Of a stretch of 26,974 nucleotides of DNA, positions 505-25,591 are shown piece by piece. The translations under genes and the position numbers were made by a program. This stretch comes from Macrostomum lignano (Eukaryota). Positions within the stretch are counted from its first letter, which is position 1. The number at the start of each line of letters is the position of its first letter. Location of the stretch: contig NIVC01000960.1 of assembly GCA_002269645.1 (NCBI GenBank), positions 1 through 26,974 of the forward strand. Reading direction: 5' to 3'. The notes under the pieces are model-generated. The model was not told the DNA's origin. It was given only the letters and a program-made list of their open reading frames with translations, and did not search any database.

Positions 505-1969
505 ATGGCGTCATCCGCCTCTTTAACCCCCGCTGAAGCCGGGCCCCGGCAACTCCGGCCGGTGACTCTGGCACCAGCGCCGCCCCACCGGGGGCAGATG
601 GGCTTGCCGCCGGCTCGGCTGGTGACATGCCCGCACGCGCAACCGGGCCCTCCGCTGAAGCCCGACGCACCCGCAACCAACGCCGCAACGAGCGGCGACG
701 GCGACTACGGGGTACTGCGGGCCGGCCACCGGCGGAAGGGGAACCTAGGGAGGGCGAGGCTGCTGTTGGGCCGAAAGGAACCACAGCAACCCCTGCCCCC
801 AGGATACAACCCCCGCTGGTGAGCCACCCAGTATACCTGCTACAAGCGCGGCCGGGCCTTCGGGAACCGCCGCCACCAACTACGCCTCAAAGGTCAAGCT
901 CCAACCGGCGGTCATCGTCTTCGGGGAAGAGCAGGACCTCACGGCCGACGAGCTCGACAGTGCCTGGCGCACCATCGATGCTGCGCTCATCGACCAGCTC
1001 CTGGCGGGCCGCCCTGTGAGCGTGGTCAAGTCTGCCAAGACCGACGGCTGCATCTTCATCTGGTGCAGCTCGGAGGAGAGCAGCCGCAATCTACGCGAGC
1101 TTCTGCCAAAGCTGAACTGGCCCAAGAAGCTCGGCAAGCTCGTCTTCGCCAGCGAGGGCGAACGACAGAAGACCCAGCGCTTTCGCGTCTGGATCCCGGC
1201 CGGCAGTGCCATTAAGTCCGGAGATCAGCTTAGGCAAATATTGCTAAAGCTGCACCCCGACCTTAAGGTCAACGGGCTCCTACACCACGCCACTTCCCGC
1301 AAGGAGAAGGGGGCTACGGTGATCCTAGGGCTCTCTGATGACTGGGCTAAGCGCTTGCCGCCTAAGTCCACAATTCATATTGGTCTGACTCAGCTGACCA
1401 TCCTCCGTTGCGAGGAGCGGAAAGCTGATGAAGCCAAGAATGCCAAAGCTTCCGAAACCGGAACTGGGGCCCAGGCTCCTCCGGCAAAGAAGCCGAGGCA
1501 AACGGCCGATCCTATGCCCGGTAAGGCAGTTCGCGCTGCTGAAACCGGAAATCGCAATCGCAGACCCGCCAGGAGCACCCGGAGGTCCGGCCTGATCCAG
1601 CGCGCGCTGGACCAGGCCAAGAACCTTCGTGCGCATCGTGAGCGGGCCCGCGCTTCTCGCGCTCCACCCCAACAGCCAGAAGGCCAGACTCTAAGCGGGG
1701 AGGCTCCGACCGACTGGTTCGAGTCTGTGACTCACCAGGAGGCTGGCGCCACCCGCATCGACCTGACCGACGAGGCAGAGGGGACGGGCAGTGACAGCAC
1801 CGAAGCACGCAGGAGAGGCGACGGTAACGTCCACGCTGGGCTCACGTCCGCGGAGGACTCCACAGCCACCCTAACTGCTGAGGACGCTGAAACTCCCATG
1901 GAGGTCTGCGGGTCACCCACCACTGAAAAGGAGGAGGATGACCTGCTCAACGATTCCCCAACTGCGTGA
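505..1969 (+). pseudogene. LINE ORF1 (LOA-type, DUF4780-like core), apparently split by two -1 frameshifts near 544-547 and 796-800
   Basis: The frame of the 1016..1969 ORF is open from 749: ...TNYASKVKLQPAVIVFGEEQDLTADELDSAWRTIDAALIDQLLAGRPVSVVKS...FRVWIP. The basic segment ARRTRNQRRNERRRRLRG is in the -1 frame (open 537-1019). The ATG at 505 has good Kozak context in a third frame. One extra C in each of two C-runs gives a ~488-aa ORF. The DUF4780 resemblance is recalled, not searched. Confidence 0.7.
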
Positions 1970-1971
1970 TA

Positions 1972-4900
1972 ATGATCAGCAACCAGGGAATCCATTGCCT
2001 GCAGATTAATCTGCAGCACTGCGTCGCAGCCTCGGTCAACCTTATGCGTTACGCCGAGCTCGACAAGCCGGGGCTCATCCTCGTCCAGGAACCCTGGACT
2101 CTCAGAGGTAAGCCTCAAAACGCCCCTGCTGGCTACAATTGTTTTTATACTTACCCTCGCGAGGCCAACCAGCCTCCCAGAGCTTGCATCTTTGCGAGCA
2201 AAACGCTCAGTGCGTGGCTCAGATCGGACCTGTCCAACAGGGACATCTGCGTCATCCAATCCGAGGACCTTCTTCCTGGGAAGACCACCCTCATTGCCTC
2301 GGTTTACCTACCAGGCGATGCTGCGGTCGTCCCCAGAGCCCTCGCTACGCTGGTAGAGCTCTGCTCTGCCAAAAACTACGAGCTCATGGTTGCCGGCGAC
2401 ATCAACGCCCACCACACTCACTGGGGCAGCACTGGCATTAATCAGAGAGGCGAAGACCTCCTAGCCTACGTTGCCTCTACGACCCTCGAGTTCTGCAACT
2501 CTGGGTCCACCCCTACCTTTGACAACGGACGGTGGTCGGAGGTGATCGACGCTACGCTCGCAACGCCCAGACTCTACCAGAGTATTGGGGCGTGGCGGGT
2601 GCTTCCAGTGTCCTCACTATCGGATCACAAGTTCATCTCCTTCAACCTAATGGCCGCGCGTAGCGCAACTCGTGTTATGTGGAGACGGAACGCCAGAAAT
2701 ACGGATTGGGAAACCTTCGGGCTCGCCCTGAAGGAATTCCATCGGTCTCCTGGCCAACCATCCACGATCACGTCGTGCCGAGAGGCGGATGAGTGCGCGA
2801 CTGTTTTGACAGAGACGCTAACCGCCGCCTTTGAGGCGTCCTGCCCTTTAAAAGCCTATAAAGGGAAAAAATCGGCGCCGTGGTGGAATCCCGAGCTCGG
2901 CAACCTCCGTCGCAGGGCTAAGAGACTCCACCGCAGAGCAACTAAAACTAAGAGCCCTGCAGACCAAACCGCCTATCATGAAGCAATTCATGAGTTTAAA
3001 AGGCAGGTTAGGAATGCAAAGGCTCAAAAATGGCGACAATACTGTGAGGAGCTAGAGGGCTCACGCCCCACCTCCAGAGTTGTGAAAGCGCTCACGCTGG
3101 ACAAAATGTCTAAGCTCTCCTCGGTCAAACGCACCGACGGTACGTCCACGGACAACCCAGGGGAAACGCTTGATGTAATGCTCACTGCGTTTTTCCCTAA
3201 CGAGCCAGCTAACCAGACCACTCCGGATCACTCGGAGGGAGGTCACGCGCTGGCTGCATCTATCATCACGGAGGACCGCATTGTGAGAGCGGCAAATTCC
3301 TTCAAGCCTTTCAAAGCCCCAGGACCCGACGGCATTGTACCGGCCCTTCTAAGAGAGGCGGTTAAATGCCCAGGCTTCCTGCGCAAACTTTGCAGCCTTC
3401 TTCGGGCATGCATCACGCTTGGTTATGTCCCGCAGGCATGGACCGAGGCAAAGGTGATCTTTATCCCTAAGCCAGGCCGCCCGGACTACCATTCTATCAA
3501 ATCCTTCAGACCGATCAGCTTGACCTCCTCCCTGGTCAAGCTGATGGAGAGACTGGTGCTTTGGCGCCTTCTCTCTGTTGAGCTGAAGAACAAACCTCTC
3601 AGCGAGAACCAGCACGCTTTTCGGGCGGGTCGCTCCACTGAAAGCGCGCTGCACGTCCTGGTCGATAAACTCGAGAAGGCCGTGCTTGGTAGTGGCTTTG
3701 CTCTGGGGATCTTCCTGGACATCATTGGCGCCTTCGATAACGTCCTCTTTGAGGCGTTCCGAAGAGCTCTTTGTGAGAGGCTAACGCACTCACATCTCAC
3801 CAGATGAATCATGTACATGATCAGCCATCGCACGGCCACCGCCAGTCTGCTGGGCTACCAGAGGACGGTCCCCGTCTGCAAAGGTAGCCCGCAAGGTGGG
3901 GTGCTGTCTCCAGTTCTCTGGAATATGGTCATCGATGAGCTCCTCCGGGATGTTCGGCCTGACCCCATTCTGAAAGTTGGATATGCGGACGATGTCACCG
4001 CGGTGGCATCTGGTCCGTCCCCTGATACCCTCAGGGACCTTCTTCAGAACTTCATCTACGCTGCTGAGCAATGGGCGGACCGCTGTGGTTTAAGGCTCTC
4101 TGAGACTAAGACCGCAGCGATCATGTTCACCAGCAGGACCAAGTGGCAGATTCGGCCGCTCACGCTTTACGGAAGGGAAATCCCCTTCTGCAAGCAGACT
4201 AAATGTCTGGGTATTACCCTGGACCACAGGCTGAACTGGTCTCCCCACGTTCAAACAAAAGCCAAAAAGGCCTTCGCAGTCCTCGCGCAATTGCGCAGGG
4301 CCGTCGGCACCACCTGGGGGCTCACCCCCAAGCGCCTCTGGTGGATCTACACTGCAATGGTTAGGCCCGCTATCTCGTATGGCGGCCTGATCTGGGCTAG
4401 CGCCCTGCAGATAAAGACCTGTCTAGAGGCTCTCAGGAGAGCGCAAGGGCGCGCTTGTCGCACGATCATGAGCGCCCCTCCGTCTGCTCCTTACGATGGC
4501 CTCAACGCCTTCCTCAACATTCCTCCGCTGGACATCTTTGTCCGCAGGGAAGCGGCTAAGACTGCCCGCCGTCTAGCTGACGCTGGCATTCGAATCCAGC
4601 CCCATAGGGCCATGGCTAAGCGCAAGCTTCTGCCCCACGCTGACCTCTGCCTCAAGGACTTGAGAGACAGCGGCGGGCTCCACGTCCTATCTGACGGCGA
4701 ACCCCGCACTCTCAACCTCTTTCAGCGCTACAAGGTCACCATCCCCTCTAGGGATGCTGCCAATGACCACTGGAATTTCCAGGAGGTCCATTGCTACACG
4801 GACGGATCCATCAAAGACGGTCGCGCCGGCTTTGGGGTCTGCATCATCATCAACGGCCGCGTAATTGCCACGCATGCCCAGCACACTGGTAGACTCTCCA

Positions 4901-5676
4901 CAGTCTTCCAGAACGAAGTCCTTGCCATCAGCTCTTGCGCTGCAGAGCTAAACGCCAAGGTTACGAGAGGAAAGACTATTGTCATCCACTCCGACAGCCA
5001 AGCGGCCTTACAGGCCCTTTGCCACACCACAACGAACTCCCGGACAGTCGCCGACTGCGCCCGGCAGCTCAACCTCCTGGCCAGAAGCAATACTGTCAGG
5101 CTGAAGTGGATCCCAGGGCACGCAGGGTTTCCGGGGAACGAGCTGGCAGACACCCTCGCCAAGAGGGGCGGCTCTGGCTCTTTTTTCGGCCCTGCCCCCC
5201 TGGTCCCTATGCCCTTGACAGTCATCAATCGTCAGATCGACGACTGGGCTGACTCCCTCCACAGGGACAGATGGGCGGGCACCCAAAACTGCCGGCAATC
5301 TCGTGCCGCGGTTCCTTGCCCGTCTCACAGGCTCAGAAACATCCTTCTGAACCAGAATCGGAAGGATATTCGAGCCCTTGTCATGACCCTTACCGGCCAT
5401 GGCTACCTCGCCAGGCACTGCTTCCTCCGAGGCGACCTCGAGAGCGAAATTTGCCCCTTTTGCGAGTGCGACAATGAAGATGCTCAGCACTTTGTCTGTC
5501 ACTGCCCTTTCTTTAATAGAGACCGGCTACGCTACCTCGGGCCGAACCCGTCCATTGACGAGGTTTGCCAGCCCGACAGCATCCCACGGCTCATCCAGTT
5601 CCTTCGGGCGACTAGACGAGCCAGTTTCTTCCCAACGGAAGATCACGCTGCAGGACGGACCGGCGGACCACCCTGA
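1972..5676 (+). pseudogene. LINE ORF2 (AP endonuclease - reverse transcriptase - RNase H - CCHC knuckle), interrupted by one in-frame TGA at 3805-3807
   Basis: APE: QINLQH, VQEPW, SVYLP, GDINAHH, IDAT, SDH. RT: KAPGPDG, FRPISL, QHAFR, FLDIIGAFD, PQGGVLSP, YADD, LGITLD. RNase H: YTDGS, QNEVLAI, HSDSQAAL, WIPGH, NELADTLAK. C-terminus CPFC..EDAQHFVCHC. The 1966..3807 and 3811..5676 ORFs are in the same frame. Confidence 0.95.
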
Positions 5677-7418: not shown

Positions 7419-7757
7419 GTAAGTGCGCTGTGATCAAGACCAGCACCAGACAGACCTACTTCTTGCCCGTCATCGGTTTGGTTCCGCCTGAGGAGCTGAA
7501 ACCAGCCGATCAGGTCGGCGTTAACAAAGACTCGTTTCTAATCTTGGAAAAGCTGCCAGCCGAATACGATTCCCGAGTCAAAGCTATGGAAGTTGACGAG
7601 AGACCAACGGAGCAATACAGCGATATTGGCGGTTTAGATAAACAAATCCAAGAACTAATTGAAGCCGTCGTGCTTCCAATGACTCATAAGGAGAGATTTA
7701 AGTCGATCGGGATTCAACCGCCAAAGGGCGTGCTGTTGTATGGCCCGCCGGGTACTG
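7419..7757 (+). CDS. PSMC3: 26S proteasome regulatory ATPase subunit 6A (Rpt5), internal exon (first exon in window; 5' exons absent)
   Basis: Acceptor TTCTCAG|GT AAG TGC; (G)[21 protein letters not shown]...[32 protein letters not shown]...[10 protein letters not shown](G); donor G|GTGAGT; length 339 = 2+336+1. Confidence 0.96.
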
Positions 7758-7844
7758 GTGAGTCAGGGAGAAAATATATTGTGAAAAACACTATGAGCCT
7801 ATAAGGGTTCACAAAGTTAATCGCCTTTAAATTTCCATTGGGAA

Positions 7845-8680
7845 AAATAGCCCCTGAATCTCAAATGGAGAAAATCGCCTCTGAATCCCAGATGGAGAAA
7901 ATCCCTCTGAATCTCAGATGGAGAAAATCGCCTCTGAATCTCAGTTAAGGAAAATCCCCTCTGAATCTCAATTGAGGAAAATCGCCTCTGAATCTCAGAT
8001 GAGGAAAATCCCCTCTGAATCTCAGTTGAGGAAAATGGCCTCTGAATCTCAGTTGAGGAAAATCACCTCTGAATCTCAGTTGAGGAAAATCACCTCTGAA
8101 TCTCAGTTAGGGAAAATCCGTCTGAATCTCAGTTAGGGAAAATCCCTCTGAATCTCAGTTGAGGAAAATCACCTCTGAATCTCAGTTAGGGAAAATCCCT
8201 CTGAATCTCAGATGAGGAAAATCACCTCTGAATCTCAGTTAGGGAAAATCCCTCTGAATCTCAGATGAGGAAAATCACCTCTGAATCTCAGTTGAGGAAA
8301 ATCACCTCTGAATCTCAGATGAGGAAAATGGCCTCTGAATCTCAGTTGAGGAAAATCACCTCTGAATCTCAGTTAGGGAAAATCCCTCTGAATCTCAGAT
8401 GAGGAAAATCCCTCTGAATCTCAGTTAGGGAAAATCCCTCTGAATCTCAGATGAGGAAAATCCCTCTGAATCTCAGATGAGGAAAATCACCTCTGAATCT
8501 CAGTTGAGGAAAATCACCTCTGAATCTCAGTTGAGGAAAATCACCCTGAATCTCAGTTGAGGAAAATCACCTCTGAATCTCAGTTAGGGAAAATCCGTCT
8601 GAATCTCAGTTAGGGAAAATCCCTCTGAATCTCAGATGAGGAAAATGGCCTCTGAATCTCAGTTGGGCAAAATCACCTGA
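7845..8680. repeat. 26-27-bp intronic minisatellite (AAAATCACCTCTGAATCTCAGTTGAGG), ~31 copies
   Basis: 9-aa periodic ORF (KIASESQLR); fills PSMC3 intron 7758-8758. Confidence 0.95.
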
Positions 8681-8718
8681 GAAACAACCCAAGGATTAAG
8701 TTACTGTTAAACACCTAA

Positions 8719-9722
<1,004 letters not shown>

Positions 9723-9816
9723 TAAGAAAGACAAAAAAGAGAATCGGCGCATACACACAGATAACACAAACAGATCTCAGATGCCTTGCCCTTCAATTGT
9801 ATCTCCAACCTTTCAG

Positions 9817-10155
9817 GTGATCGCAGCCACCAATCGAGTTGACATCCTCGACCCCGCCCTGCTCCGTTCGAGCCGACTGGATCGAAAAATCGAATTCCCA
9901 GCCCCGAACGAAGAAGCCAGAGCCAGGATTATGCAAATCCATTCGCGCAAAATGAACGTCAGATCCGATGTCAATTTTGACGAGTTGGCCAGGTGCACAG
10001 ATGATTTCAATGGCGCTCAGTGCAAAGCGGTCTGCGTTGAGGCTGGCATGCTGGCGCTGAGGCGTGGCGCCACTAGCGTCTCGCACGAAGACTTTATGGA
10101 CGCCATACTTGAGGTTCAGGCTAAGAAAAAGAGCAGCCTGAACTATTATGCTTGA
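9817..10155 (+). CDS. PSMC3: PSMC3/Rpt5 terminal exon
   Basis: Acceptor TTTCAG|GTG; [28 protein letters not shown]...[12 protein letters not shown]...[15 protein letters not shown]; TGA stop. Confidence 0.96.
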
Positions 10156-10176
10156 GATGGTTTGATTGACTACTGT

Positions 10177-10182
10177 AATAAA
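10177..10182 (+). terminator. Putative polyadenylation signal of PSMC3
   Basis: AATAAA about 21 nt after the stop codon. Confidence 0.65.
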
Positions 10183-11760: not shown

Positions 11761-12360
11761 TTAGGACTTGTGAGAGTTGCAACACCATTGAAATGAGTCA
11801 GCCTGGCTAAGCTTCTTCCTGTTGGAGACACTTGTCCAAGAGCATTGGCAGCAGTATGCTGTGTGCTGCGGCGAATTAGATAGCTTCTTACTCAAGTTTT
11901 GCCTGTCAGGCATGAAGTTCCGAAAGAACATATAGTTTACAGACGATACCCAATGTTGACCGCGGAAAATTAAAACTTGAAAGTCGCACTTCATGCAATG
12001 CATATTGTCACAGGCTTTCTCCTGCATTAGGCTACAATGCCCATACTCCATCTCCTTTGGACCAGCCAGAAAAATAGACCTACACTTCAAAGTAGGTGTT
12101 TCATTCGAGTAGTCTTTGGCGGTCAGCGGTGCTTCAGTCGAAGATTTCTGTGGATGTGACTTGCTTTTCTTGCTATCAGATTCGATTTCGTCAAGAGATT
12201 TGAGCAGGTCGCTAGCATCGCTAGTTTTTGTTGCAGTTGTAGAGTTCACCTTAGTTGAATTGTTGGTCTTCACAGAGTTCACAGGAGTCAAAGTGGACTT
12301 TTTTTGCAATGAGCCTTCAATTTGATCCAGCAGATCGTCAACGTCATCTATTCCAGCCAT
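11761..12360 (-). CDS. CFAP418: Cilia- and flagella-associated protein 418 (C8orf37; retinal-maintenance domain), single-exon CDS, 199 aa (alternative start at 12375)
   Basis: N-terminal DDVDDLLDQIE; C-terminal Cys-rich domain ACDNMHCMKCDFQV...W...NYMFFRNFMPD...AYCCQCSW...W.C..H, matching the C8orf37 pattern as recalled; AATAAA on the - strand at 11632-11637. Confidence 0.88.
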   Translation of the reverse strand: MAGIDDVDDLLDQIEGSLQKKSTLTPVNSVKTNNSTKVNSTTATKTSDASDLLKSLDEIESDSKKSKSHPQKSSTEAPLTAKDYSNETPTLKCRSIFLAGPKEMEYGHCSLMQEKACDNMHCMKCDFQVLIFRGQHWVSSVNYMFFRNFMPDRQNLSKKLSNSPQHTAYCCQCSWTSVSNRKKLSQADSFQWCCNSHKS

Positions 12361-13930
12361 TTCAGCTTCTTTCATATAACTAATAGAAAAAATATGCCTG
12401 AAGTAAGTACGTTGAAATGCTGACAAAGCAAAAGATTTATTTATGCTGAAGGTTTATTTTTTCATACTATAATTACAAATAAATAAAAACACTAAATAGA
12501 AAATACGACGAAAAATATTTTATTTATTTTTATGAAATAACTACAAAACTTTGTTATTCTTTAACAAAACGTTATAAAGTACGGAATAAGTTGAAACCTA
12601 AATTGCTAGTATTCCGCATTGGGACGAAAGTTACAAATTGCTTAGTCGCTTAAGAGCCCCTGACTCGAAGAAAGATCGATTTTTATTATAAATTCATATT
12701 AATTTATTGCGTTCATTAAATTTGACTTTCTTAATTAGTAGCTAATCCTAAATTAGTCTAAAAACTGAAGATTTTTGATTGCACGAGGAGATATTTTTAA
12801 TATCTTCTTGATATTTTGTACCTGTAATACAAAACCAACATTCACGTATTACGTTGCTAGTATCCTTGTAGAATCCTCAATTAAATAAATGAAAGATTTT
12901 TTAATTGCACTAAAATATTGATTTTTGTGAATGGAACAGTAGGACAGTAGTAGCAAAAATCCTGAATATATATTTACTACAAAAACACCGTAAAGCACCG
13001 GAGATAAATTTGTCTTAACTTCAAGATTAACAAATTTCTGCATAATTATAAGTTGAATTTCGGGATTGCATGAGTTACAGATATCTTGCAAAGCTTTGAA
13101 ACTCACATTCAAACAAGTGAACAAAAATATTGTTACATTTTTTTTTCTAGGATAAACTCAAGATGTATTGAACCAGATAGATTGCGTTGACTGTACTGTA
13201 CCTGCGTGGAAATACAAGTAAAGTTTCGGAACAAAAAACACAAGTCATGGTTGGTTTTACTTCTAAAATTTAAGCGATAAATTATAAGTTCAAACAATTA
13301 TTTTCGATTACACTATTGAACTAGAAAGGTTTTTTACTGAAATTGAAACGGAGTGTTAACCAAATCGATTTCATTTATAATAATTTAAAAATAAAATACA
13401 AAGTATTTGACTTAATGCAATCCAGAATAATAACACAAAAAGTGATCATATTATATTAACCTTGAAACTTTATTACAACACAAAAATGGCATAACAGCCA
13501 CAGAAAGGAATTAGAAGTAGAGATAAGCGGAAATACATCGATGCATGCCCACAACAGGAATTGATTTCTGGTCGAATATATTTATGCCTCATATTTACAA
13601 ATCAGAATGTAGATATTTATAAACTTTATAGACTACTTGTACTATAAAGCGTGAGCGCAACTATACCGAGGATCAAAGCAGATTTAATGTTTAAGGCAGC
13701 AAGGTAAGATTCAGCGATAGAAGCTTACAATTTATTATTTAAATTCGCGCGAAAAAAAATCGAAATCTTATGACATCTCGTTTTCAGGGTTGCTAAAAGC
13801 AAACTAGGCCTTATTACAGTTAATGTGGTGACAAAATTAAGACATTGGAATAAGAGCGTTTGAATAGGCATAAAACATTTAGCTCGTATAATTGATCCGT
13901 AATTTAATGTCACGTAGAAAAAATGTAGTA

Positions 13931-14267
13931 CCTCTCAGGCATTCGATCAATAATCACAAAGCGAATAACGTATCCTCTGGTTGGTCGTCTCGGTGCTTAA
14001 GCGTACGCGAACGATCCGACGAAGAAGCAGCGGTGCCAGCGCTAGTATAGTTCTGTTGCTGTTGCTGTTGAAGAAACAAGTTGAAATCCGAGCTAGAAAC
14101 GCCTGACGTAGCTGTCTGGGATGCCGCTCCCCCCGCTGTTGCTATGCCGGTGCGCTGAGCCAGGCCGTTCTGCAGGCCGGTCGCCAGCTGCTGGCCACCG
14201 TCAGTGGCGCCTGCGTAGGCGGCAGCCCCGCTCATGCCAGCTCGGTTGCGATCGAATGCCTGAGAGG
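13931..14267. repeat. Perfect 18-bp inverted repeat (arms 13931-13948 and 14250-14267) bracketing the TOM1 terminal exon
   Basis: CCTCTCAGGCATTCGATC is the exact reverse complement of GATCGAATGCCTGAGAGG. Confidence 0.95.
13954..14259 (-). CDS. TOM1: TOM1-family terminal exon 5
   Basis: Acceptor CCTCTCAG|GCA TTC; ...GVSSSDFNLFLQ...EDTLFAL* matches the TOM1/TOM1L2 C-terminal (E/D)FDxFL and LFAL* signatures; AATAAA on the - strand at 13731-13736. Confidence 0.9.
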   Translation of the reverse strand, partial: AFDRNRAGMSGAAAYAGATDGGQQLATGLQNGLAQRTGIATAGGAASQTATSGVSSSDFNLFLQQQQQQNYTSAGTAASSSDRSRTLKHRDDQPEDTLFAL

Positions 14268-14499
14268 CAGGTAGATTCAAGTAAAAAGCATCAGATATGA
14301 GATTACTTGCTACTATTAAAGAGCTTGAAAATCCCCGGGTTATTCCAAAAAAATCACGACAGTTTCAGCTGAAGGATGTAGGGTGCTCATTGCTCATACT
14401 AAAGCCTTCAGGAAAATCTGGCACGGTGCCCCAACAACTGACTGAGGATCTGGAAGGCTCCGTGGAGCATTCCAGTCTCTAGGAGGATACTCACGAGTA

Positions 14500-15090
14500 A
14501 GGGCTGGCCCAGGAACTGAGAATCTGGGAGGCTGGCCCAGCAACTGACACTCTTGGAAGTGGCCCAGCAACTGACACTCTTGGAAGTGGCCCAGCAACTG
14601 ACACTCTGGGAGGCTGGCCCAGCAACTGACACTCTGGGAGGCTGGCCCAGCAACTGACACTCTGGGAGGCTGGCCTAGCAACTGACACTCTTGGAAGTGG
14701 CCCAGCAACTGACACTCTGGGAGGCTGGCCCAGCAACTGACACTCTGGGAGGCTGGCCCAGCAACTGACACTCTGGAGGCTGGCCCAGCAACTGACACTC
14801 TGGGAGGCTGGCCTAGCAACTGAGGATCTGGGAGGCTGGCCAAGCAACTGACACTCTTGGAGGCTGGCCAAGCAACTGATGAGATCTGAGAGGCTGGCCC
14901 AGCAACTGATGAGATGTGGGAGGCTGACCCAGCAACTGACACTCTTGGAGGCTGGCCCAGCAACTGACACTCTTGGAGGCTGGCCCAGCAACTGACACTC
15001 TGGGAGGCTGACCCAGCAAACTGACACTCTGGGAGGCTGGCCCAGCAACTGAGGATCTGGGAGGCTGGCCCAGCAACTGAGGATCTGGGA
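14500..15090. repeat. 28-bp intronic minisatellite (GGGAGGCTGGCCCAGCAACTGACACTCT), ~21 copies
   Basis: 28-nt spacing of CCAGCAACTG; in TOM1 intron 14260-15145. Confidence 0.95.
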
Positions 15091-15145
15091 GGGCTTACTA
15101 AAGAATAAAACAATGCATCTATGCTCAGCTAGCCGCTAACAGTAC

Positions 15146-15428
15146 CTGCCGACTGCTAGCAAACATGTCAAATTCATCAGACTGTTCCAATGGCTGCTGC
15201 TGTTGCACAGATTGCGAACCGGCTTGGGTAATCTGGAGGCCAGCCAACTGCTGCCCAATGGATGACGGCTTCGGCTCGTCTGGTGTAGAGAAATCAATCA
15301 GCGGTGCCGCCTGCGGCTCGGGAGGCTGCGATGAAGCTGGAACCGGAGGCGGCTGCTGCAGAGCATCAGGCCGATTGAACATGGGATTAAATGAAGGCTG
15401 CTGTTGTTGTTGTTGCACTTGTGGTTGC
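15146..15428 (-). CDS. TOM1: TOM1-family exon 4 (Q/P-rich; LIDF and DEFDMFA motifs)
   Basis: Acceptor TTCCGCAG|G; ...PLIDFS...QQLAGLQI...SDEFDMFASSRQ; donor CAG|GTACTG; phases consistent. Confidence 0.88.
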
Positions 15429-15584: not shown

Positions 15585-15935
15585 GGTTGGCCATACTTGA
15601 TGCTTAGTCAAAATTCAGAGTTGCTCATAAATTATGGGTTGGTCATGCGTAGTAGTAGGTCATACTTAGGAGCTGGTCATATTAAAGGGTTGATCATAAT
15701 GAGGAGTTGGTCATAAACTATGGTTTGCTCATGTTTTGGAGTTGGTCATACTCAAGAGTTGGTCATACTTAACAGTAAGTCATGCATAGGAGTAATTGGT
15801 CATACTTAGGAGTAATTGGTCATACTTAGGAGTAATTGGTCATGCATAGGAGTAATTGGTCATGCTTAGGAGTTGGTCATAAATTACGGGTTGCTCATAT
15901 TTTAGAGTCGGTCATAGTTAGGCGTTGGTCATAAC
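15585..15935. repeat. Degenerate ~17-22-bp intronic minisatellite (core TTGGTCATA; e.g. CATACTTAGGAGTAATTGGT)
   Basis: Recurrent TTGGTCAT/TTGCTCAT core; in TOM1 intron 15429-15967. Confidence 0.85.
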
Positions 15936-16240: not shown

Positions 16241-16483
16241 TCATGATGATGATGCTCATATAGTCAAAATAATAACAACCATGATGATCATATAGTCACA
16301 ATACTCATAACCATAATGATGATCATATAGTCACAATTCTCATAACCATGATGATGATCATATAGTCACAATACTCACAATCATGATGATGTTCATATAG
16401 TCACAATACTCATAACCATGATGATGATCATATAGTCACAGTACTCATAACCATGATGATGTTCATATAGTCACAATACTCAT
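16241..16483. repeat. 35-bp intronic minisatellite (CATGATGATGATCATATAGTCACAATACTCATAAC), ~7 copies
   Basis: CATATAGTCACA at 16289, 16324, 16359, 16394, 16429, 16464 (35-nt period); TOM1 intron 16198-16610. Confidence 0.95.
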
Positions 16484-17174: not shown

Positions 17175-17737
<563 letters not shown>

Positions 17738-18075: not shown

Positions 18076-18889
18076 GCTTGTTTGATTTTCCCAATTCTCG
18101 ATTGTAAACAATTTATATCGAATAGCTTAGCTAAAGAGGTCTGGCAGGAAAAATCAAAGGCATGAAGTGATAGCATTTTGAGTAAGATAGCTAGTTATTC
18201 ACCAGATAAGTTTGTCATATAGATTTCAGTAGTCTAGATTAGGCTCTACTTGGAGCATTATTATTATTGTTTGGCTTTCTTGCTTCTAAGGGCAGACATA
18301 AGTAGTTACATTTGGTGCAGTAGCTAAAGTTGAGGCAGCCTTATTTATTTTACAAGCGTATTTACCAGACAGGCCAAATCATTCACCCACTAATTGAGCA
18401 GTAGAGAATGCACAACAATTAGTTAATACAACAAGCTGTCTATGGCCAAAGCTCTATTAACTGCCTACAAATTATGGTAGGCAGTGAAGGCCATTAATTG
18501 CCTAAGCATTCTAAAGTTTATTATAAACAATACTAAAACAAAATATGGTATATTTTTGCAACCAACAAAACCATATGCATAATGACATTGTCTTATGAAT
18601 GTATTTTGATTGGCCTTTAACAATTATTTCAAAGCATTTTAATAATGACAAGCTGTTGAAACCCGCGGATTTTGAACCCGGGGAATTTCAATCCCTGAAC
18701 TATTTTTGCATGTATTCTAAAATCTGAGGTCTAACTCAAACAAAAACTTGTTAATAGTTACGAAAGAGTTAAACATAAAATAGAGTACACATTTGTGTAA
18801 AATTAGGATTTGAGGCAAACATTGATATTGTTGGCTAGGGTGCTGCGCAGAATGTCAGGCAAACTCTGGCAGTCTGGCTGGCCTCTGCC

Positions 18890-21620: not shown

Positions 21621-22101
21621 CTCATCTGCCCGCACATAAGCTGGATACTGGATTCTTTATCTGCTTTTGAAGTAAAAGTCTGCCCATTCCTGCTTGGAAA
21701 GCCAGTTTGTGGGACGTAGTACTCTCATGGCTGTTCTCATGCTTTGATCATGTCATCTTTCTTGCCAATTTGCAGTCCTGAAAGGAATTTGTGTATTTTC
21801 AGCTCCACTGCAGTCTGCATCAGTCTAACTAACAACCAAGGAAATACGCATTTCTTAGGAGGACATTTAAAATTTAAAGTACTTTTAAGAGAAACCTAAA
21901 ATTTCCATGGTGTGACTAATTTAGTAGGGTTGTATTGCATTGCATCGCCTTTTCATAAATCTTTCGCTTTTACAAACCATGCTGGATTCCCTCGATTTGC
22001 CATCCACTGTTAAACTGCTGCAGAGTTTGCCAATACAGAGGACAGTGGTTAGAATTTCTCACTAAACTGTCATGGCTAAACGTAGCCTCTCCACTCGTGG
22101 G

Positions 22102-22958
22102 TAGGGATTCCAATCCCGGGATCCCGGGATTGGGGCCAAAAATCCGGGATTTGAATCCCGGGATTTTTTGGGGATCGAATCCTGGATTGCAAACGTCTGG
22201 GATCGGGATCCCGGGATTTCAAGGCCTTAATTCCGGGATTGGTCCGGGATTAGAACAACCTTTCAATGCCTAAATTAGATAATTTAAAGTCTAAACGTTT
22301 ATTTGAATAATAAAACATTTATTTGTTTTTGCTGTTTCTCAATGAAACATTAAACATTTGCAAAGCTCCTGTCCTAATTGAGCTAAAAATTGTTAATGTG
22401 AACTGTAAATGATGGATAATTTAAACTTTTTTTCGTTTTCCACCACGAGACGAGACTGAGACTCTGAGAGTCGCGAGAACATTACTACTGCACGCGGCAC
22501 GCCGCACAGTCCGTCATGTATTATAATTTAAATTTTAATATTTTGACAATTACCTACAAAGATTTTACTCTTGTTAGTTGTTACTTAGTCTTGTACTCGG
22601 GCATCTTGAAGTTTAGGTATTTAAAATATTCCAAATTGTGCAAAAATCATGAGATTGCACAGAGACATCTTTCTAGGATACAGTAACAAAAGTCAACAAT
22701 AAAAACTTACAAAATTTAGCTATATACCTAATCTTCAAGAGACCTTAGGGATTCCAATCCCGGGATCCCGGGATTGGGGCCAAAAATCCGGGATTTGAAT
22801 CCCGGGATTTTTTTGGGGATCAAATCCCGGGATTTTTAATCCCGGGATTTCAAAAGCACCGGGATTCCGGGATTTTGAATCCTGGGATTTCAACAGCATC
22901 GGGATTTCGGGACTATTCAATACCGGGATTGTAAAATGTCAGGATTTTGGAATCCCTA
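22102..22958. mobile_element. hAT-like non-autonomous DNA transposon (MITE), 857 bp, with an internal duplicate of its left end at 22746
   Basis: 12-bp perfect TIR TAGGGATTCCAA / TTGGAATCCCTA; 8-bp flanks CTCGTGGG versus CTTGCGGG (6/8); subterminal (C)CCGGGAT repeats; no ORF. Confidence 0.82.
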
Positions 22959-24212: not shown

Positions 24213-25591
24213 TGCTGGCTGTTATTACGAAGTAGAGATTGCATTCATTATCATATAGGCCGACCATTGTACCAAAAAATTAATAAGCTGTAGATTACAC
24301 AGAATTATTCTGTCGCCGAATTTGTCCATATTGAGTCTGTCGCCGAATTTGTTTGGCGCTTGTCGCCGAATTGGTCAGTCAGCACCCATTTGGAAGCCGT
24401 GGCCGACGGACGGCAAAATTTTTACAGGAAATCCTAAACTAAAATGAATTTATATTTTCATATAAATTATTTTAATTTTTTTTAATAAATTGTTAATTAG
24501 TTATATTTTAAAGGTTCTAGTAGGTAATAAATTTCTTAAAAAAGGTTTGTTTTAATACCTTAGTTTCTAAATTTAAAAACTAAGTTTTTGTGTGTAGGGT
24601 GCTATTTTTTAAATATATGCTCACTGAAAACCGTGTTATCTGATTTCTCTACTATCCTGTCTATCTCTAATCAGTTTAATAATTTATTGCTTTTAAAAAA
24701 GGGAACCGCAACTGTCTATATTAAATATTTAGGGCCTAGCCTAAAAAGCTAGTGGCCTAGTATTTATTTAGTGGGGCAAGTGTTTTACAAGCCTAATATT
24801 TATAAATTTAAATTAGTTGCTCCCATTTTTCCCACAATGGACCCAAGAATGTAAGTTTGGTTTTTTACAGGTCTTTAGGCCTATAATAGGTCTAATAGTC
24901 TAGTATATTTTCCTATTTCTACAGTAGGGTGCTGAGTTCAATAAGACAAAATAATTTTTAACTATGTCCTATTGTAGCTTTTTTTATTGTTGGCAGTGCT
25001 TATCCCCATGGTACCATAGGAATAATTTCTGTCTTATTCCAATGGTACATACATGCGCAACCTCCAAAATTTGATCAGCCATGCAATTTATTTTGAACAA
25101 AAAATGCAACTTAGTTTTTGGCCAAAAATGTGACTTAAGTGTGAAAGAAACCCTAAAGCAAAATTAATGCAACTTTGGGTAAACAACAGGAGTAACCATG
25201 ACTGTATTGTAAAGGCAGAATGCCTCATTATCTACTTAGTACTACTTGGGTATTTATTCAGGTGCAGATTTTTGTGATTTACCTTGGTTGGCCACCAAAA
25301 TGGTTGGTCAGATTGGCTGACTCGGCCAACTGTTGCGCATGTATAAATGGTATTGTGGGAATAATTTTCTGCTTATCTATATGGCACACTGACAAGAAAG
25401 TTGCTCCTAGGGGCCTCTTTTATATATGCCATATATAAATAGTTTATAGCTTATTGAAAGGAAATTTAAATTGACAATAAGAAGCTATTGATATATAAAC
25501 TCAAATCCATATACTAAAAATGAAAATCAGTTCTAAATTATAAACACTTACTAAAGTAATTTACTTTAAATCATATTCATAACTCATAAGT

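What the first reader, a model, noticed from the sequence alone, without database searches (positions are those of the whole stretch)
13931..14267. The TOM1 3'UTR begins with a perfect 18-nt antisense copy of its own terminal 3' splice site
Seen: in the pre-mRNA the acceptor reads CCUCUCAG|GCAUUCGAUC (14267-14250), and 5 nt after the stop the UTR reads GAUCGAAUGCCUGAGAGG (13948-13931). These are exactly complementary and extendable by G.U pairs at both ends to about 21 bp, in otherwise unique sequence, so chance is very unlikely. The stem would bury the AG and polypyrimidine tract and loop out the whole last coding exon. After splicing only the 10 exonic nt remain pairable, so the structure is pre-mRNA-specific. 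Inference: a cis-antisense switch for terminal-exon splicing or 3'-end coupling (possibly an ADAR substrate at the AG), or the footprint of a replication template-switch.
Basis: partly seen in the sequence, partly recalled or inferred. Interest (0 to 1): 0.75.

Follow-up and report, generated by a model that had tools for sequence, protein, structure and literature searches.

The report
Template-switch copy of splice site in UTR
The 18-base inverted repeat is real and not chance, but it is best read as the scar of one copying error that pasted an inverted copy of the last splice acceptor into the 3'UTR of some copies of a flatworm TOM1-like gene, with no evidence that it is a regulatory device.

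Summary
Bases 14250-14267 (3' splice site of the last intron plus the first 10 exon bases) and 13931-13948 (5 nt after the stop codon) are perfectly complementary and occur nowhere else in the window.

The window is a whole contig of Macrostomum lignano (assembly Mlig_3_7). The gene is the TOM1-like gene Mlig024558g3.

The assembly holds four copies of this locus:
- Three near-identical copies (0.3-1.1% apart) carry both arms.
- The fourth copy, L001 (5.6% diverged), keeps the acceptor arm (17/18) but has an unrelated 16-nt tract where the UTR arm should be. Its flanks are identical to the window.

The window-type tract is an exact reverse complement of its own acceptor, 301 nt away. The L001 tract has no template nearby. 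One template-switch event, or a templated repair insertion, therefore explains 8 substitutions plus 1 indel at once.

Folding predicts the 20-21 bp helix (-38 kcal/mol) with probability about 1 in pre-mRNA. A 13-bp remnant, not 10, persists in spliced mRNA.

Nothing shows selection or a splicing role: there is no conservation in the homeolog, no covariation, and the annotated transcripts are normally spliced. No outgroup could be reached, so polarity rests on parsimony.

Verdict: a mutational footprint, a new member of a known kind, of modest interest.

The parts
14250..14267 (-). Acceptor arm, the source of the copy. In mRNA sense it reads CCTCTCAG|GCATTCGATC: the last 8 nt of intron 4 plus the first 10 nt of the last coding exon (codons A-F-D-R).
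   Evidence: It is conserved 17/18 in homeolog L001 (CGTCTCAGGCATTCGATC). The exon junction ...SRQ|AFD... aligns with Lingula TOM1L2 ...SRQSFE....
13931..13948 (-). UTR arm, the copy. It reads GATCGAATGCCTGAGAGG and starts 5 nt after the stop codon. It is present in three locus copies and absent in the fourth.
13931..13945 (-). The 15 nt that actually differ from the homeolog. The window has CGAATGCCTGAGAGG; L001 has TAATAATATGCGAGCG. This is the inferred newly templated tract. The preceding GAT (13946-13948) is shared by both states and by the template, so it is a candidate 3-nt microhomology at the switch point.
   Evidence: The switch points themselves are inferred.
14260..15145 (-). Terminal intron (886 nt, GT..AG). 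If it were retained, the frame would read ...ASSRQ-VLLAAS-stop.
   Evidence: The annotation agrees.
13954..14259 (-). Last coding exon (306 nt including the TGA stop at 13954-13956). It forms the 301-nt loop closed by the helix.
15146..15148 (-). Last three bases of exon 4 (CAG). They are identical to the last three intron bases, so 13 bp of the helix survive splicing.
13731..13736 (-). AATAAA, the probable poly(A) signal, which places the UTR arm at the very start of a 3'UTR of roughly 230 nt.
   Evidence: Read from the sequence. The cleavage site is inferred, not shown.

Best explanation
The repeat is the footprint of a single templated mutation, a short-range template switch.

**Proposed event (inferred).** In an ancestor of the three near-identical copies of this Macrostomum lignano TOM1-like locus, DNA synthesis through the start of the 3'UTR left its template after ...TTATTGAT. 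It re-primed on the complementary ATC at the end of the acceptor region 301 nt upstream and copied 15 nt backwards along it, giving CGAATGCCTGAGAGG. It then returned to the original template at TACTAC. This replaced a 16-nt ancestral tract, which is preserved in homeolog L001 as TAATAATATGCGAGCG.

**Which arm is which.** The acceptor arm is the old, constrained sequence (splice site plus conserved codons). The UTR arm is the young copy.

**Consequence.** The event created, in one step, a perfect 18-nt complement that G.U and A-U pairs extend to 20-21 bp. The complement joins the terminal 3' splice site to the first bases of the 3'UTR.

**Function.** I see no evidence that the helix was selected or acts as a switch. 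The most likely status is neutral or mildly deleterious. If it has any molecular effect, the expected one is reduced or delayed use of the terminal 3' splice site in the copies that carry it.

**Shown:** the repeat, its restriction to one lineage of copies, the intact flanks, the one-sided availability of a template, and the predicted stability.

**Inferred:** the polarity (no outgroup), the switch points, the enzymology, and the neutrality.
For: 1. The arms are perfect and unique.
2. The assembly holds four copies of the locus. W, L002 and L003 carry both arms. L001 carries the acceptor arm (17/18) but not the UTR arm.
3. The W-L001 alignment has 8 substitutions plus 1 gap in the 19 columns of the UTR arm, against a background of 5.6%. 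The binomial probability of 8 or more in 20 is about 6e-6. Tens of identical bases lie on both sides.
4. The W-specific 15-mer has a perfect reverse-complement template in W and a 1-mismatch template in L001. The L001-specific 16-mer has no match better than 5/16 mismatches on either strand within +-2 kb of either locus, and none in 25 kb of L001. One event therefore explains W from an L001-like state, and no single templated event explains the reverse.
5. The acceptor arm must be the older one. It is shared by all copies, and its exon part encodes residues aligned with a brachiopod TOM1L2.
6. The pattern matches the published template-switch model, which makes perfect hairpin stems in one event (PMC5453318, PMC9435742, PMC8794818).
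7. Gene models for the carrier copies use this acceptor normally, and the annotation was built from RNA-seq and transcript assemblies (PMC5730564).
Against: - No outgroup species or independent read set could be reached. Polarity therefore rests on parsimony only.
- The L001 tract shares scattered bases with the reverse complement of its own acceptor (ATGC..GAG.CGTA), including one position that looks compensatory: C-G in W and G-C in L001. The similarity is not significant (22% of random windows score as well; shuffle p = 0.32).
- L001 has a different, discontinuous complement to its acceptor further down its UTR (-19.2 kcal/mol, P = 0.02-0.04 against shuffled UTRs). This could hint at selection for acceptor-UTR pairing.
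- The copy distance (about 300 nt) is at or beyond the range kept by some published template-switch screens, one of which discards events with switch-point distances above 250 bp.
- The helix is predicted to form with probability about 1, so an effect on splicing cannot be dismissed.
Confidence: 0.78

Rival explanations
1. The helix is a selected long-range RNA structure. By pairing the terminal 3' splice site with the start of the 3'UTR, it loops out the last coding exon and tunes terminal-intron splicing, intron retention or 3'-end formation. The template switch would then only be how the structure arose.
For: - The helix is predicted with pair probabilities of 0.99-1.0 in contexts of 426, 736 and 1422 nt, with a duplex energy of -38.4 kcal/mol.
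- It is retained unchanged in three copies.
- Homeolog L001 has its own weaker, discontinuous acceptor-UTR complement (L001 15338-15369, -19.2 kcal/mol, P = 0.02-0.04). The homologous stretch in W pairs worse than 98% of shuffles, as if it had been replaced.
- Long-range pairings that affect splicing are well documented in other animals (PMC8052449, PMC7797038).
Against: - The perfect arm is absent from L001, which keeps the same gene structure and an intact frame.
- The three carriers differ by only 0.3-1.1%, so their identity in 36 nt says nothing about constraint.
- There is no significant covariation.
- The L001 hint is post hoc and borderline.
- Even without the UTR arm, the AG is predicted to be mostly paired locally, so predicted pairing alone says little about splicing.
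- The annotation shows normal splicing at this acceptor.
Confidence: 0.1
2. The tract was copied in the same way, but by a different enzyme pathway. It is a templated insertion made during end joining of a double-strand break (polymerase-theta type: a deletion plus a short insertion copied from nearby), not a replication-fork template switch.
For: - The change is a deletion-insertion: 16 nt out and 15 nt in.
- There is possible microhomology at the junctions, GAT on one side and G on the other.
- The template lies within a few hundred bases.
- That this pattern is typical of theta-mediated end joining is my own background knowledge, not a tool result.
Against: Nothing in the sequence separates the two pathways. 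A net length change of only 1 nt and a clean return to the template are equally typical of replication template switching (PMC5453318).
Confidence: 0.25
3. The perfect inverted repeat is ancestral, and L001 lost its UTR arm.
For: - There is no outgroup, so polarity is formally open.
- L001 keeps scattered matches to the reverse complement of its acceptor.
Against: - Loss would need about 9 changes packed into 19 nt against a 5.6% background, or a complex event with no detectable template.
- The residual similarity is at chance level.
Confidence: 0.07
4. The repeat is an assembly or sequencing artefact of this contig.
For: - The assembly is based on long noisy reads and is highly redundant (PMC5730564).
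- Single-base gaps that look like consensus errors occur in exons of L002 and L003.
Against: - The identical arm pair is present in three separately assembled contigs. One of them (L002) has clearly different intron lengths, 1006 and 720 nt against 682 and 886 nt.
- A 15-nt precise replacement is not a known long-read artefact type. That last point is my own judgement.
Confidence: 0.02
5. The arms are terminal inverted repeats of a small DNA transposon, or they are a chance match.
For: In form it is an 18-nt perfect inverted repeat flanking 301 nt.
Against: - The interior is the conserved last coding exon of TOM1.
- There is no target-site duplication: the flanks are ...cctg and tact....
- The sequence is not repeated elsewhere in the window or the loci.
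- One arm exists without the other in L001.
- Chance expectation is about 26974 x 1000 / 4^18, roughly 4e-4 for any such pair in the window, and no shuffle reproduced it.
Confidence: 0.01

Closest known systems
Short-range template-switch mutations (four-point model of Loytynoja and Goldman; PMC5453318, PMC9435742) and their creation of perfect RNA stems in one step (Monttinen and Loytynoja, PMC8794818; de novo miRNA hairpins, PMC10710096)
   Same: - A tight cluster of substitutions and an indel relative to a close relative.
- The derived tract is an exact reverse complement of nearby sequence.
- The flanks are intact.
- The result is a perfect stem in a transcribed region.
   Different: - The arms are 301 nt apart, so the product is a long-range helix closing a whole exon rather than a compact hairpin.
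- The template is a 3' splice site and the copy lies in the 3'UTR of the same gene.
- Polarity is inferred from a homeologous copy in a neopolyploid genome, not from an outgroup species or a pedigree.
Quasipalindrome correction by intrastrand template switching (Ripley model; bacterial and yeast work, e.g. bioRxiv 10.1101/2023.08.09.552703, listed; the model itself is cited from my own knowledge)
   Same: A reverse-complement copy turns an imperfect or absent complement into a perfect one, with short microhomology at the switch.
   Different: A pre-existing quasipalindrome is not demonstrable here. The L001 tract's similarity to its acceptor is at chance level.
Conserved long-range complementary regions that regulate splicing (human PCCRs, PMC8052449; ATE1, PMC7797038; Dscam1 docking/selector pairings, PMC12962786)
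   Same: Complementary segments hundreds of bases apart in one pre-mRNA. One of them overlaps a splice signal, and an exon is looped out.
   Different: Those structures are defined by conservation, compensatory changes and mutational tests. This one is lineage-specific, perfect (hence young), and lacks covariation and any experimental support.
Polymerase-theta-mediated end joining with templated insertions (from my own knowledge)
   Same: A deletion plus a short insertion copied from flanking sequence, possibly in reverse complement, with microhomology at the junctions.
   Different: It cannot be told apart from replication template switching from the sequence alone.

Membership tests
Template-switch mutation (TSM) | A cluster of differences confined to a short tract relative to a close relative, with flanks intact | tested here: met
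   8 substitutions plus 1 gap in 19 columns, against a 5.6% background. Flanks are identical for tens of bases.
Template-switch mutation (TSM) | The derived tract is an exact reverse complement of nearby sequence in the same locus | tested here: met
   18/18 complementary to the acceptor 301 nt away.
Template-switch mutation (TSM) | The template sequence exists in the unmutated state | tested here: met
   The L001 acceptor is CGTCTCAGGCATTCGATC, 17/18.
Template-switch mutation (TSM) | The opposite direction has no templated solution | tested here: met
   The L001 16-mer has no match better than 5 mismatches within +-2 kb on either strand, and no other copy in the loci.
Template-switch mutation (TSM) | Polarity fixed by an outgroup or ancestral reconstruction | not testable with these tools
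   No other Macrostomum sequence could be retrieved.
Template-switch mutation (TSM) | Not in low-complexity or tandem-repeat sequence | tested here: met
   The arms lie outside all tandem-repeat rows and are unique.
Template-switch mutation (TSM) | The variant is real in reads or independent assemblies | tested here: inconclusive
   It is present in three contigs of one assembly.
Functional long-range RNA structure regulating splicing | Stable predicted pairing of the two regions in the pre-mRNA | tested here: met
   Pair probabilities are 0.99-1.0 in three contexts, with a duplex energy of -38.4 kcal/mol.
Functional long-range RNA structure regulating splicing | Both arms conserved in related sequences | tested here: not met
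   The UTR arm is absent in homeolog L001.
Functional long-range RNA structure regulating splicing | Compensatory substitutions | tested here: inconclusive
   One apparently concordant C-G/G-C position depends on an alignment that scores at chance level. The carriers are too similar to vary.
Functional long-range RNA structure regulating splicing | Effect on splicing shown by expression data or mutagenesis | not testable with these tools
   No RNA-seq access. The annotation only shows that the acceptor is used.
DNA transposon / MITE with terminal inverted repeats | Target-site duplication, multiple copies, non-host interior | tested here: not met
   There is no duplication at the flanks, the sequence is single-copy, and the interior is the conserved last TOM1 exon.
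ADAR editing substrate | A-to-I edits in a long duplex, with ADAR present in the species | not testable with these tools
   No read data. A literature search gave nothing relevant.

The most novel reading that the evidence does not exclude
Pairing between the terminal 3' splice site and the 3'UTR is a selected feature of this TOM1-like gene, and the partner site has turned over. Homeolog L001 would keep an older, discontinuous complement 58-89 nt after its stop codon (GAUCGA..AUGCCUG..ACGU, -19 kcal/mol). In the other lineage, a template switch would have installed a perfect complement next to the stop codon, after which the old site decayed: three substitutions, all at paired positions, and a 10-nt insertion. 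The two kinds of copy would then differ in how strongly the last intron is held back. That would make a natural pair of alleles for studying splice-site sequestration and coupling between splicing and 3'-end formation.
Probability: 0.1. Interest if true: 0.6.

Novelty: new member of a known kind. Interest (0 to 1): 0.3.

Why it matters
- It is a clean example of how one templated mutation can create a 20-bp RNA helix at a functionally sensitive place, a 3' splice site. The pre-event state is preserved in a homeologous copy in the same genome.
- Macrostomum lignano expresses both kinds of copy in the same cells and can be made transgenic. The locus is therefore a ready-made natural experiment on whether a strong downstream complement can hold back a terminal 3' splice site in vivo.
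- It does not open a new class of mechanism.
- For genome scanning, a perfect, unique, short-range inverted repeat inside a gene is more likely to be a young mutational scar than a regulatory element, unless relatives show conservation or covariation.

Tried and rejected
**Searches for an outgroup or independent data**
- A protein search with the last-exon peptide found nothing.
- A search with the C-terminal 225 aa returned only three distant hits and no Macrostomum fragments.
- Exact look-ups of the two plausible last-exon reading frames in read-derived assemblies found nothing.
- As a result, no outgroup and no independent read evidence were obtained.

**Ideas tested and not supported**
- A quasipalindrome ancestor: the L001 proximal tract against the reverse complement of its acceptor scores 12. 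22% of random windows score as well, and the shuffle p is 0.32. Not supported.
- Transposon ends: rejected. There is no target duplication, the sequence is single-copy, and the interior is a conserved coding exon.
- Known RNA families: no Rfam match at gathering threshold anywhere in the window.
- Other template-switch-like events between W and L001: none among inverted repeats of 12 nt or more within 1 kb in alignable sequence.
- ADAR in this species: the literature search was uninformative.

**Caveat on predicted pairing**
- The AG is predicted to be largely paired even when the UTR arm is left out, and also in L001. I did not treat predicted pairing on its own as meaningful.

Full report
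**1. The observation**

The minus strand of 13700-15400 shows the end of an intron...cctgCCTCTCAG, followed by GCATTCGATCgcaac. After the stop codon it reads TGAttattGATCGAATGCCTGAGAGGtactac.

The repeat finder gives arms 13931-13948 and 14250-14267, 18 nt, 100% complementary, 301 nt apart. With up to three mismatches the 18-mer occurs only at these two places. The expected count is 0.03, and 0 of 100 shuffles gave two matches. Among inverted repeats within 2 kb in the whole window, it is the only long one in unique sequence. A rough expectation for any perfect 18-nt inverted pair within 1 kb in 27 kb is 4e-4.

**2. The gene and the organism**

Five exons on the minus strand join into a 533-aa protein with a VHS and a GAT domain:
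- 18075-17786
- 17103-16611
- 16197-15968
- 15428-15146
- 14259-13954

The closest proteins are from the flatworm Macrostomum lignano; next come TOM1-like 2 proteins of brachiopods and molluscs at about 42-47% identity. My model is identical to PAA74282.1 (BOX15_Mlig024558g3). The longest contig recorded for that protein is 26,974 bases, so the window is that whole contig of assembly GCA_002269645.1.

The last exon is ancestral. The junction ...DEFDMFASSRQ|AFDRN... and the C-terminal ...LFAL align with Lingula TOM1L2.

**3. Comparison with other copies: the decisive evidence**

The assembly holds four copies of the locus.
- W (the window), L002 and L003 differ from each other by 0.3-1.1%.
- L001 (Mlig025100g1) differs from them by 5.4-6.5% in the 1.4 kb around the last exon.
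- All three close copies carry both arms perfectly.
- L001 has the acceptor arm with one mismatch (CGTCTCAGGCATTCGATC). After its stop codon it reads TTATTGAT-TAATAATATGCGAGCG-TACTAC, where W reads TTATTGAT-CGAATGCCTGAGAGG-TACTAC.

That is 8 substitutions and one gap in 19 columns between flanks that are otherwise identical. At the 5.6% background rate, the probability of 8 or more differences in 20 columns is about 6e-6.

The W-specific 15-mer has a perfect reverse-complement template in W and a one-mismatch template in L001. The L001-specific 16-mer has nothing better than 5 mismatches on either strand within +-2 kb of either locus, and no second copy in 25 kb. So a single reverse-complement copying event turns an L001-like state into the W state, and no comparable event does the reverse.

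The acceptor arm, shared by all copies and partly coding, must be the source. The UTR arm is the copy.

Intron lengths show that L002 is a truly separate copy from W: 1006 and 720 nt against 682 and 886 nt. L003 may be the same haplotype as W. This fits the three subgenomes reported for the DV1 line (PMC10733133). It also places the event after the split from the L001 lineage and before the split of the carriers. That placement is inference.

**4. Mechanism of origin**

The pattern has three features:
- a mutation cluster;
- an exact reverse complement of nearby sequence;
- clean flanks.

This is what the four-point template-switch model describes (PMC5453318, PMC9435742). That process is known to create perfect stems in one step in RNA genes and new miRNA hairpins (PMC8794818, PMC10710096).

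A plausible path: synthesis of the sense strand reaches ...TTATTGAT, the 3' GAT pairs with ATC at 14250-14252, 15 nt are copied back along the acceptor, and synthesis returns at TACTAC. The 3-nt and 1-nt microhomologies are read from the alignment, but the switch points are inferred.

A templated insertion during end joining of a break would leave the same scar, and I cannot separate the two. The distance of about 300 nt is somewhat larger than the limit used in one published screen, which discards events above 250 bp.

**5. What the RNA would do**

In pre-mRNA contexts of 426, 736 and 1422 nt, the 18 pairs have probabilities of 0.99-1.0. The outer G.U and U-A pairs have 0.93-0.99 and 0.70-0.80, and the inner G.U has 0.48. 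The duplex energy is -38.4 kcal/mol.

The helix covers the AG and the last 8-10 intron bases. It does not cover the upstream U-rich stretch.

Exon 4 ends in CAG, like the intron, so 13 perfect pairs remain in the mRNA (probability 0.98, -24.4 kcal/mol). They close a loop that holds the last 296 nt of the coding sequence, including the stop codon, and translating ribosomes would open it.

Predicted pairing by itself is weak evidence. The AG is predicted to be mostly paired even when the UTR arm is omitted, and also in L001. What sets W apart is an uninterrupted, very stable helix.

If that helix slowed splicing, the retained intron would end the protein after six extra residues (VLLAAS), removing the conserved C-terminal 101 residues.

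The annotation was built from RNA-seq and transcript assemblies, with transcripts at 95% identity or more sharing a name prefix (PMC5730564). It uses this acceptor in all carrier copies. So the site is used, though reads cannot be assigned to one of the near-identical copies from what I have.

**6. Is there any sign of selection?**

- The carriers are too similar for conservation of 36 nt to mean anything.
- L001 lacks the arm but keeps the gene structure and an intact frame.
- The L001 proximal tract shares ATGC..GAG.CGTA with the reverse complement of its own acceptor, including one position that would be a C-G to G-C swap. The alignment is at chance level.
- L001 has a different, interrupted complement to its acceptor at L001 15338-15369 (GATCGA, ATGCCTG, ACGT). 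It scores -19.2 kcal/mol, lies in the top 1.1% of windows in the locus, and has P = 0.02-0.04 against dinucleotide-shuffled UTRs.
- The homologous stretch in W (13856-13897) differs by three substitutions, all at paired positions, and a 10-nt insertion. It pairs worse than 98% of shuffles.

The L001 distal site was found post hoc and is borderline. I record it as the basis of the most novel reading, at about 10%.

**7. Comparison with what is known, and verdict**

The feature works like, and passes the testable criteria of, a short-range template-switch mutation. The outgroup criterion could not be tested.

It resembles regulatory long-range pre-mRNA structures (PMC8052449, PMC7797038, PMC12962786) only in geometry. 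It fails the conservation criterion and has no covariation or functional data.

It is not a transposon end, not a known RNA family, not an artefact of one contig, and not chance.

Novelty: a new member of a known kind. Interest is modest (0.3). The value lies in a clean natural pair of gene copies, with and without a 20-bp helix on a terminal 3' splice site, in an animal where transgenesis is available.

Noticed in passing
L001 15338-15369 (homologous stretch in the window: about 13856-13897, minus strand): Homeolog L001 has an interrupted complement to its own last splice acceptor, 58-89 nt after its stop codon (GATCGA..ATGCCTG..ACGT). It scores -19.2 kcal/mol, with P = 0.02-0.04 against shuffled UTRs. 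The window's version differs at exactly three paired positions plus a 10-nt insertion (CGAGCTAAAT, 13877-13886). It pairs worse than 98% of shuffles.
   Followed up: partly
window 17178-17735, 16246-16483, 15618-15933, 14502-15092: Each of the four introns of the TOM1-like gene holds its own tandem repeat: TCTA x 140, a 35-mer x 7, 17-20-mers, and a 28-mer x 21. Intron lengths differ between the four locus copies (for example, intron 1 is 682/1006/683/901 nt and intron 2 is 413/413/412/1517 nt), presumably through repeat-number change.
   Followed up: partly
L002 exon 4 (12971-13252) and L003 exon 1 (9891-10179): Each has a single-base gap relative to the window. This explains the frameshifted 440-aa and N-terminally shortened 496-aa annotated proteins (P0122, P0123). 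They are either long-read consensus errors or real decay of redundant copies.
   Followed up: partly
window 1016-5676, plus strand: A GC-rich non-LTR (LINE-type) retrotransposon. It has an ORF1-like frame (1016-1969), then endonuclease plus reverse transcriptase (1966-3807) and reverse transcriptase plus RNase H (3811-5676). The reverse transcriptase domain is split between two frames, so the element is probably broken.
   Followed up: partly
window 7430-10155 (plus strand) and 11761-12426 (minus strand): Neighbouring genes are a proteasome-type AAA ATPase, with minisatellites in its introns (7854-8674, 9092-9716), and a single-exon RMP (PF14996) domain gene. The gene order is the same in the other three locus copies.
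   Followed up: partly
window 22097-22930, and similar units near 18640-18700: A cluster of palindromic AATCCCGGGATT-type units, including a perfect 24-nt inverted pair (22110-22133 and 22754-22777). It is probably a small repeat family or a foldback element.
   Followed up: no
window 25332-25344 and 25049-25061: A 13-nt perfect inverted pair (ATACATGCGCAAC / GTTGCGCATGTAT, 270 nt apart). Both arms differ in L001 (ATACATGTACAAC / GTTGTGCATGTAT), so the arms changed partly in step between the homeologs.
   Followed up: no
window 13636-13658, minus strand: A second dense cluster of differences between the window and L001, about 300 nt past the stop codon. The window has CACGCTTTATAG-TACAAG and L001 has CACATTACTTTATGAATTACTTACTTACAAG. 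It looks like a small tandem duplication or a complex indel in L001 and was not analysed further.
   Followed up: no
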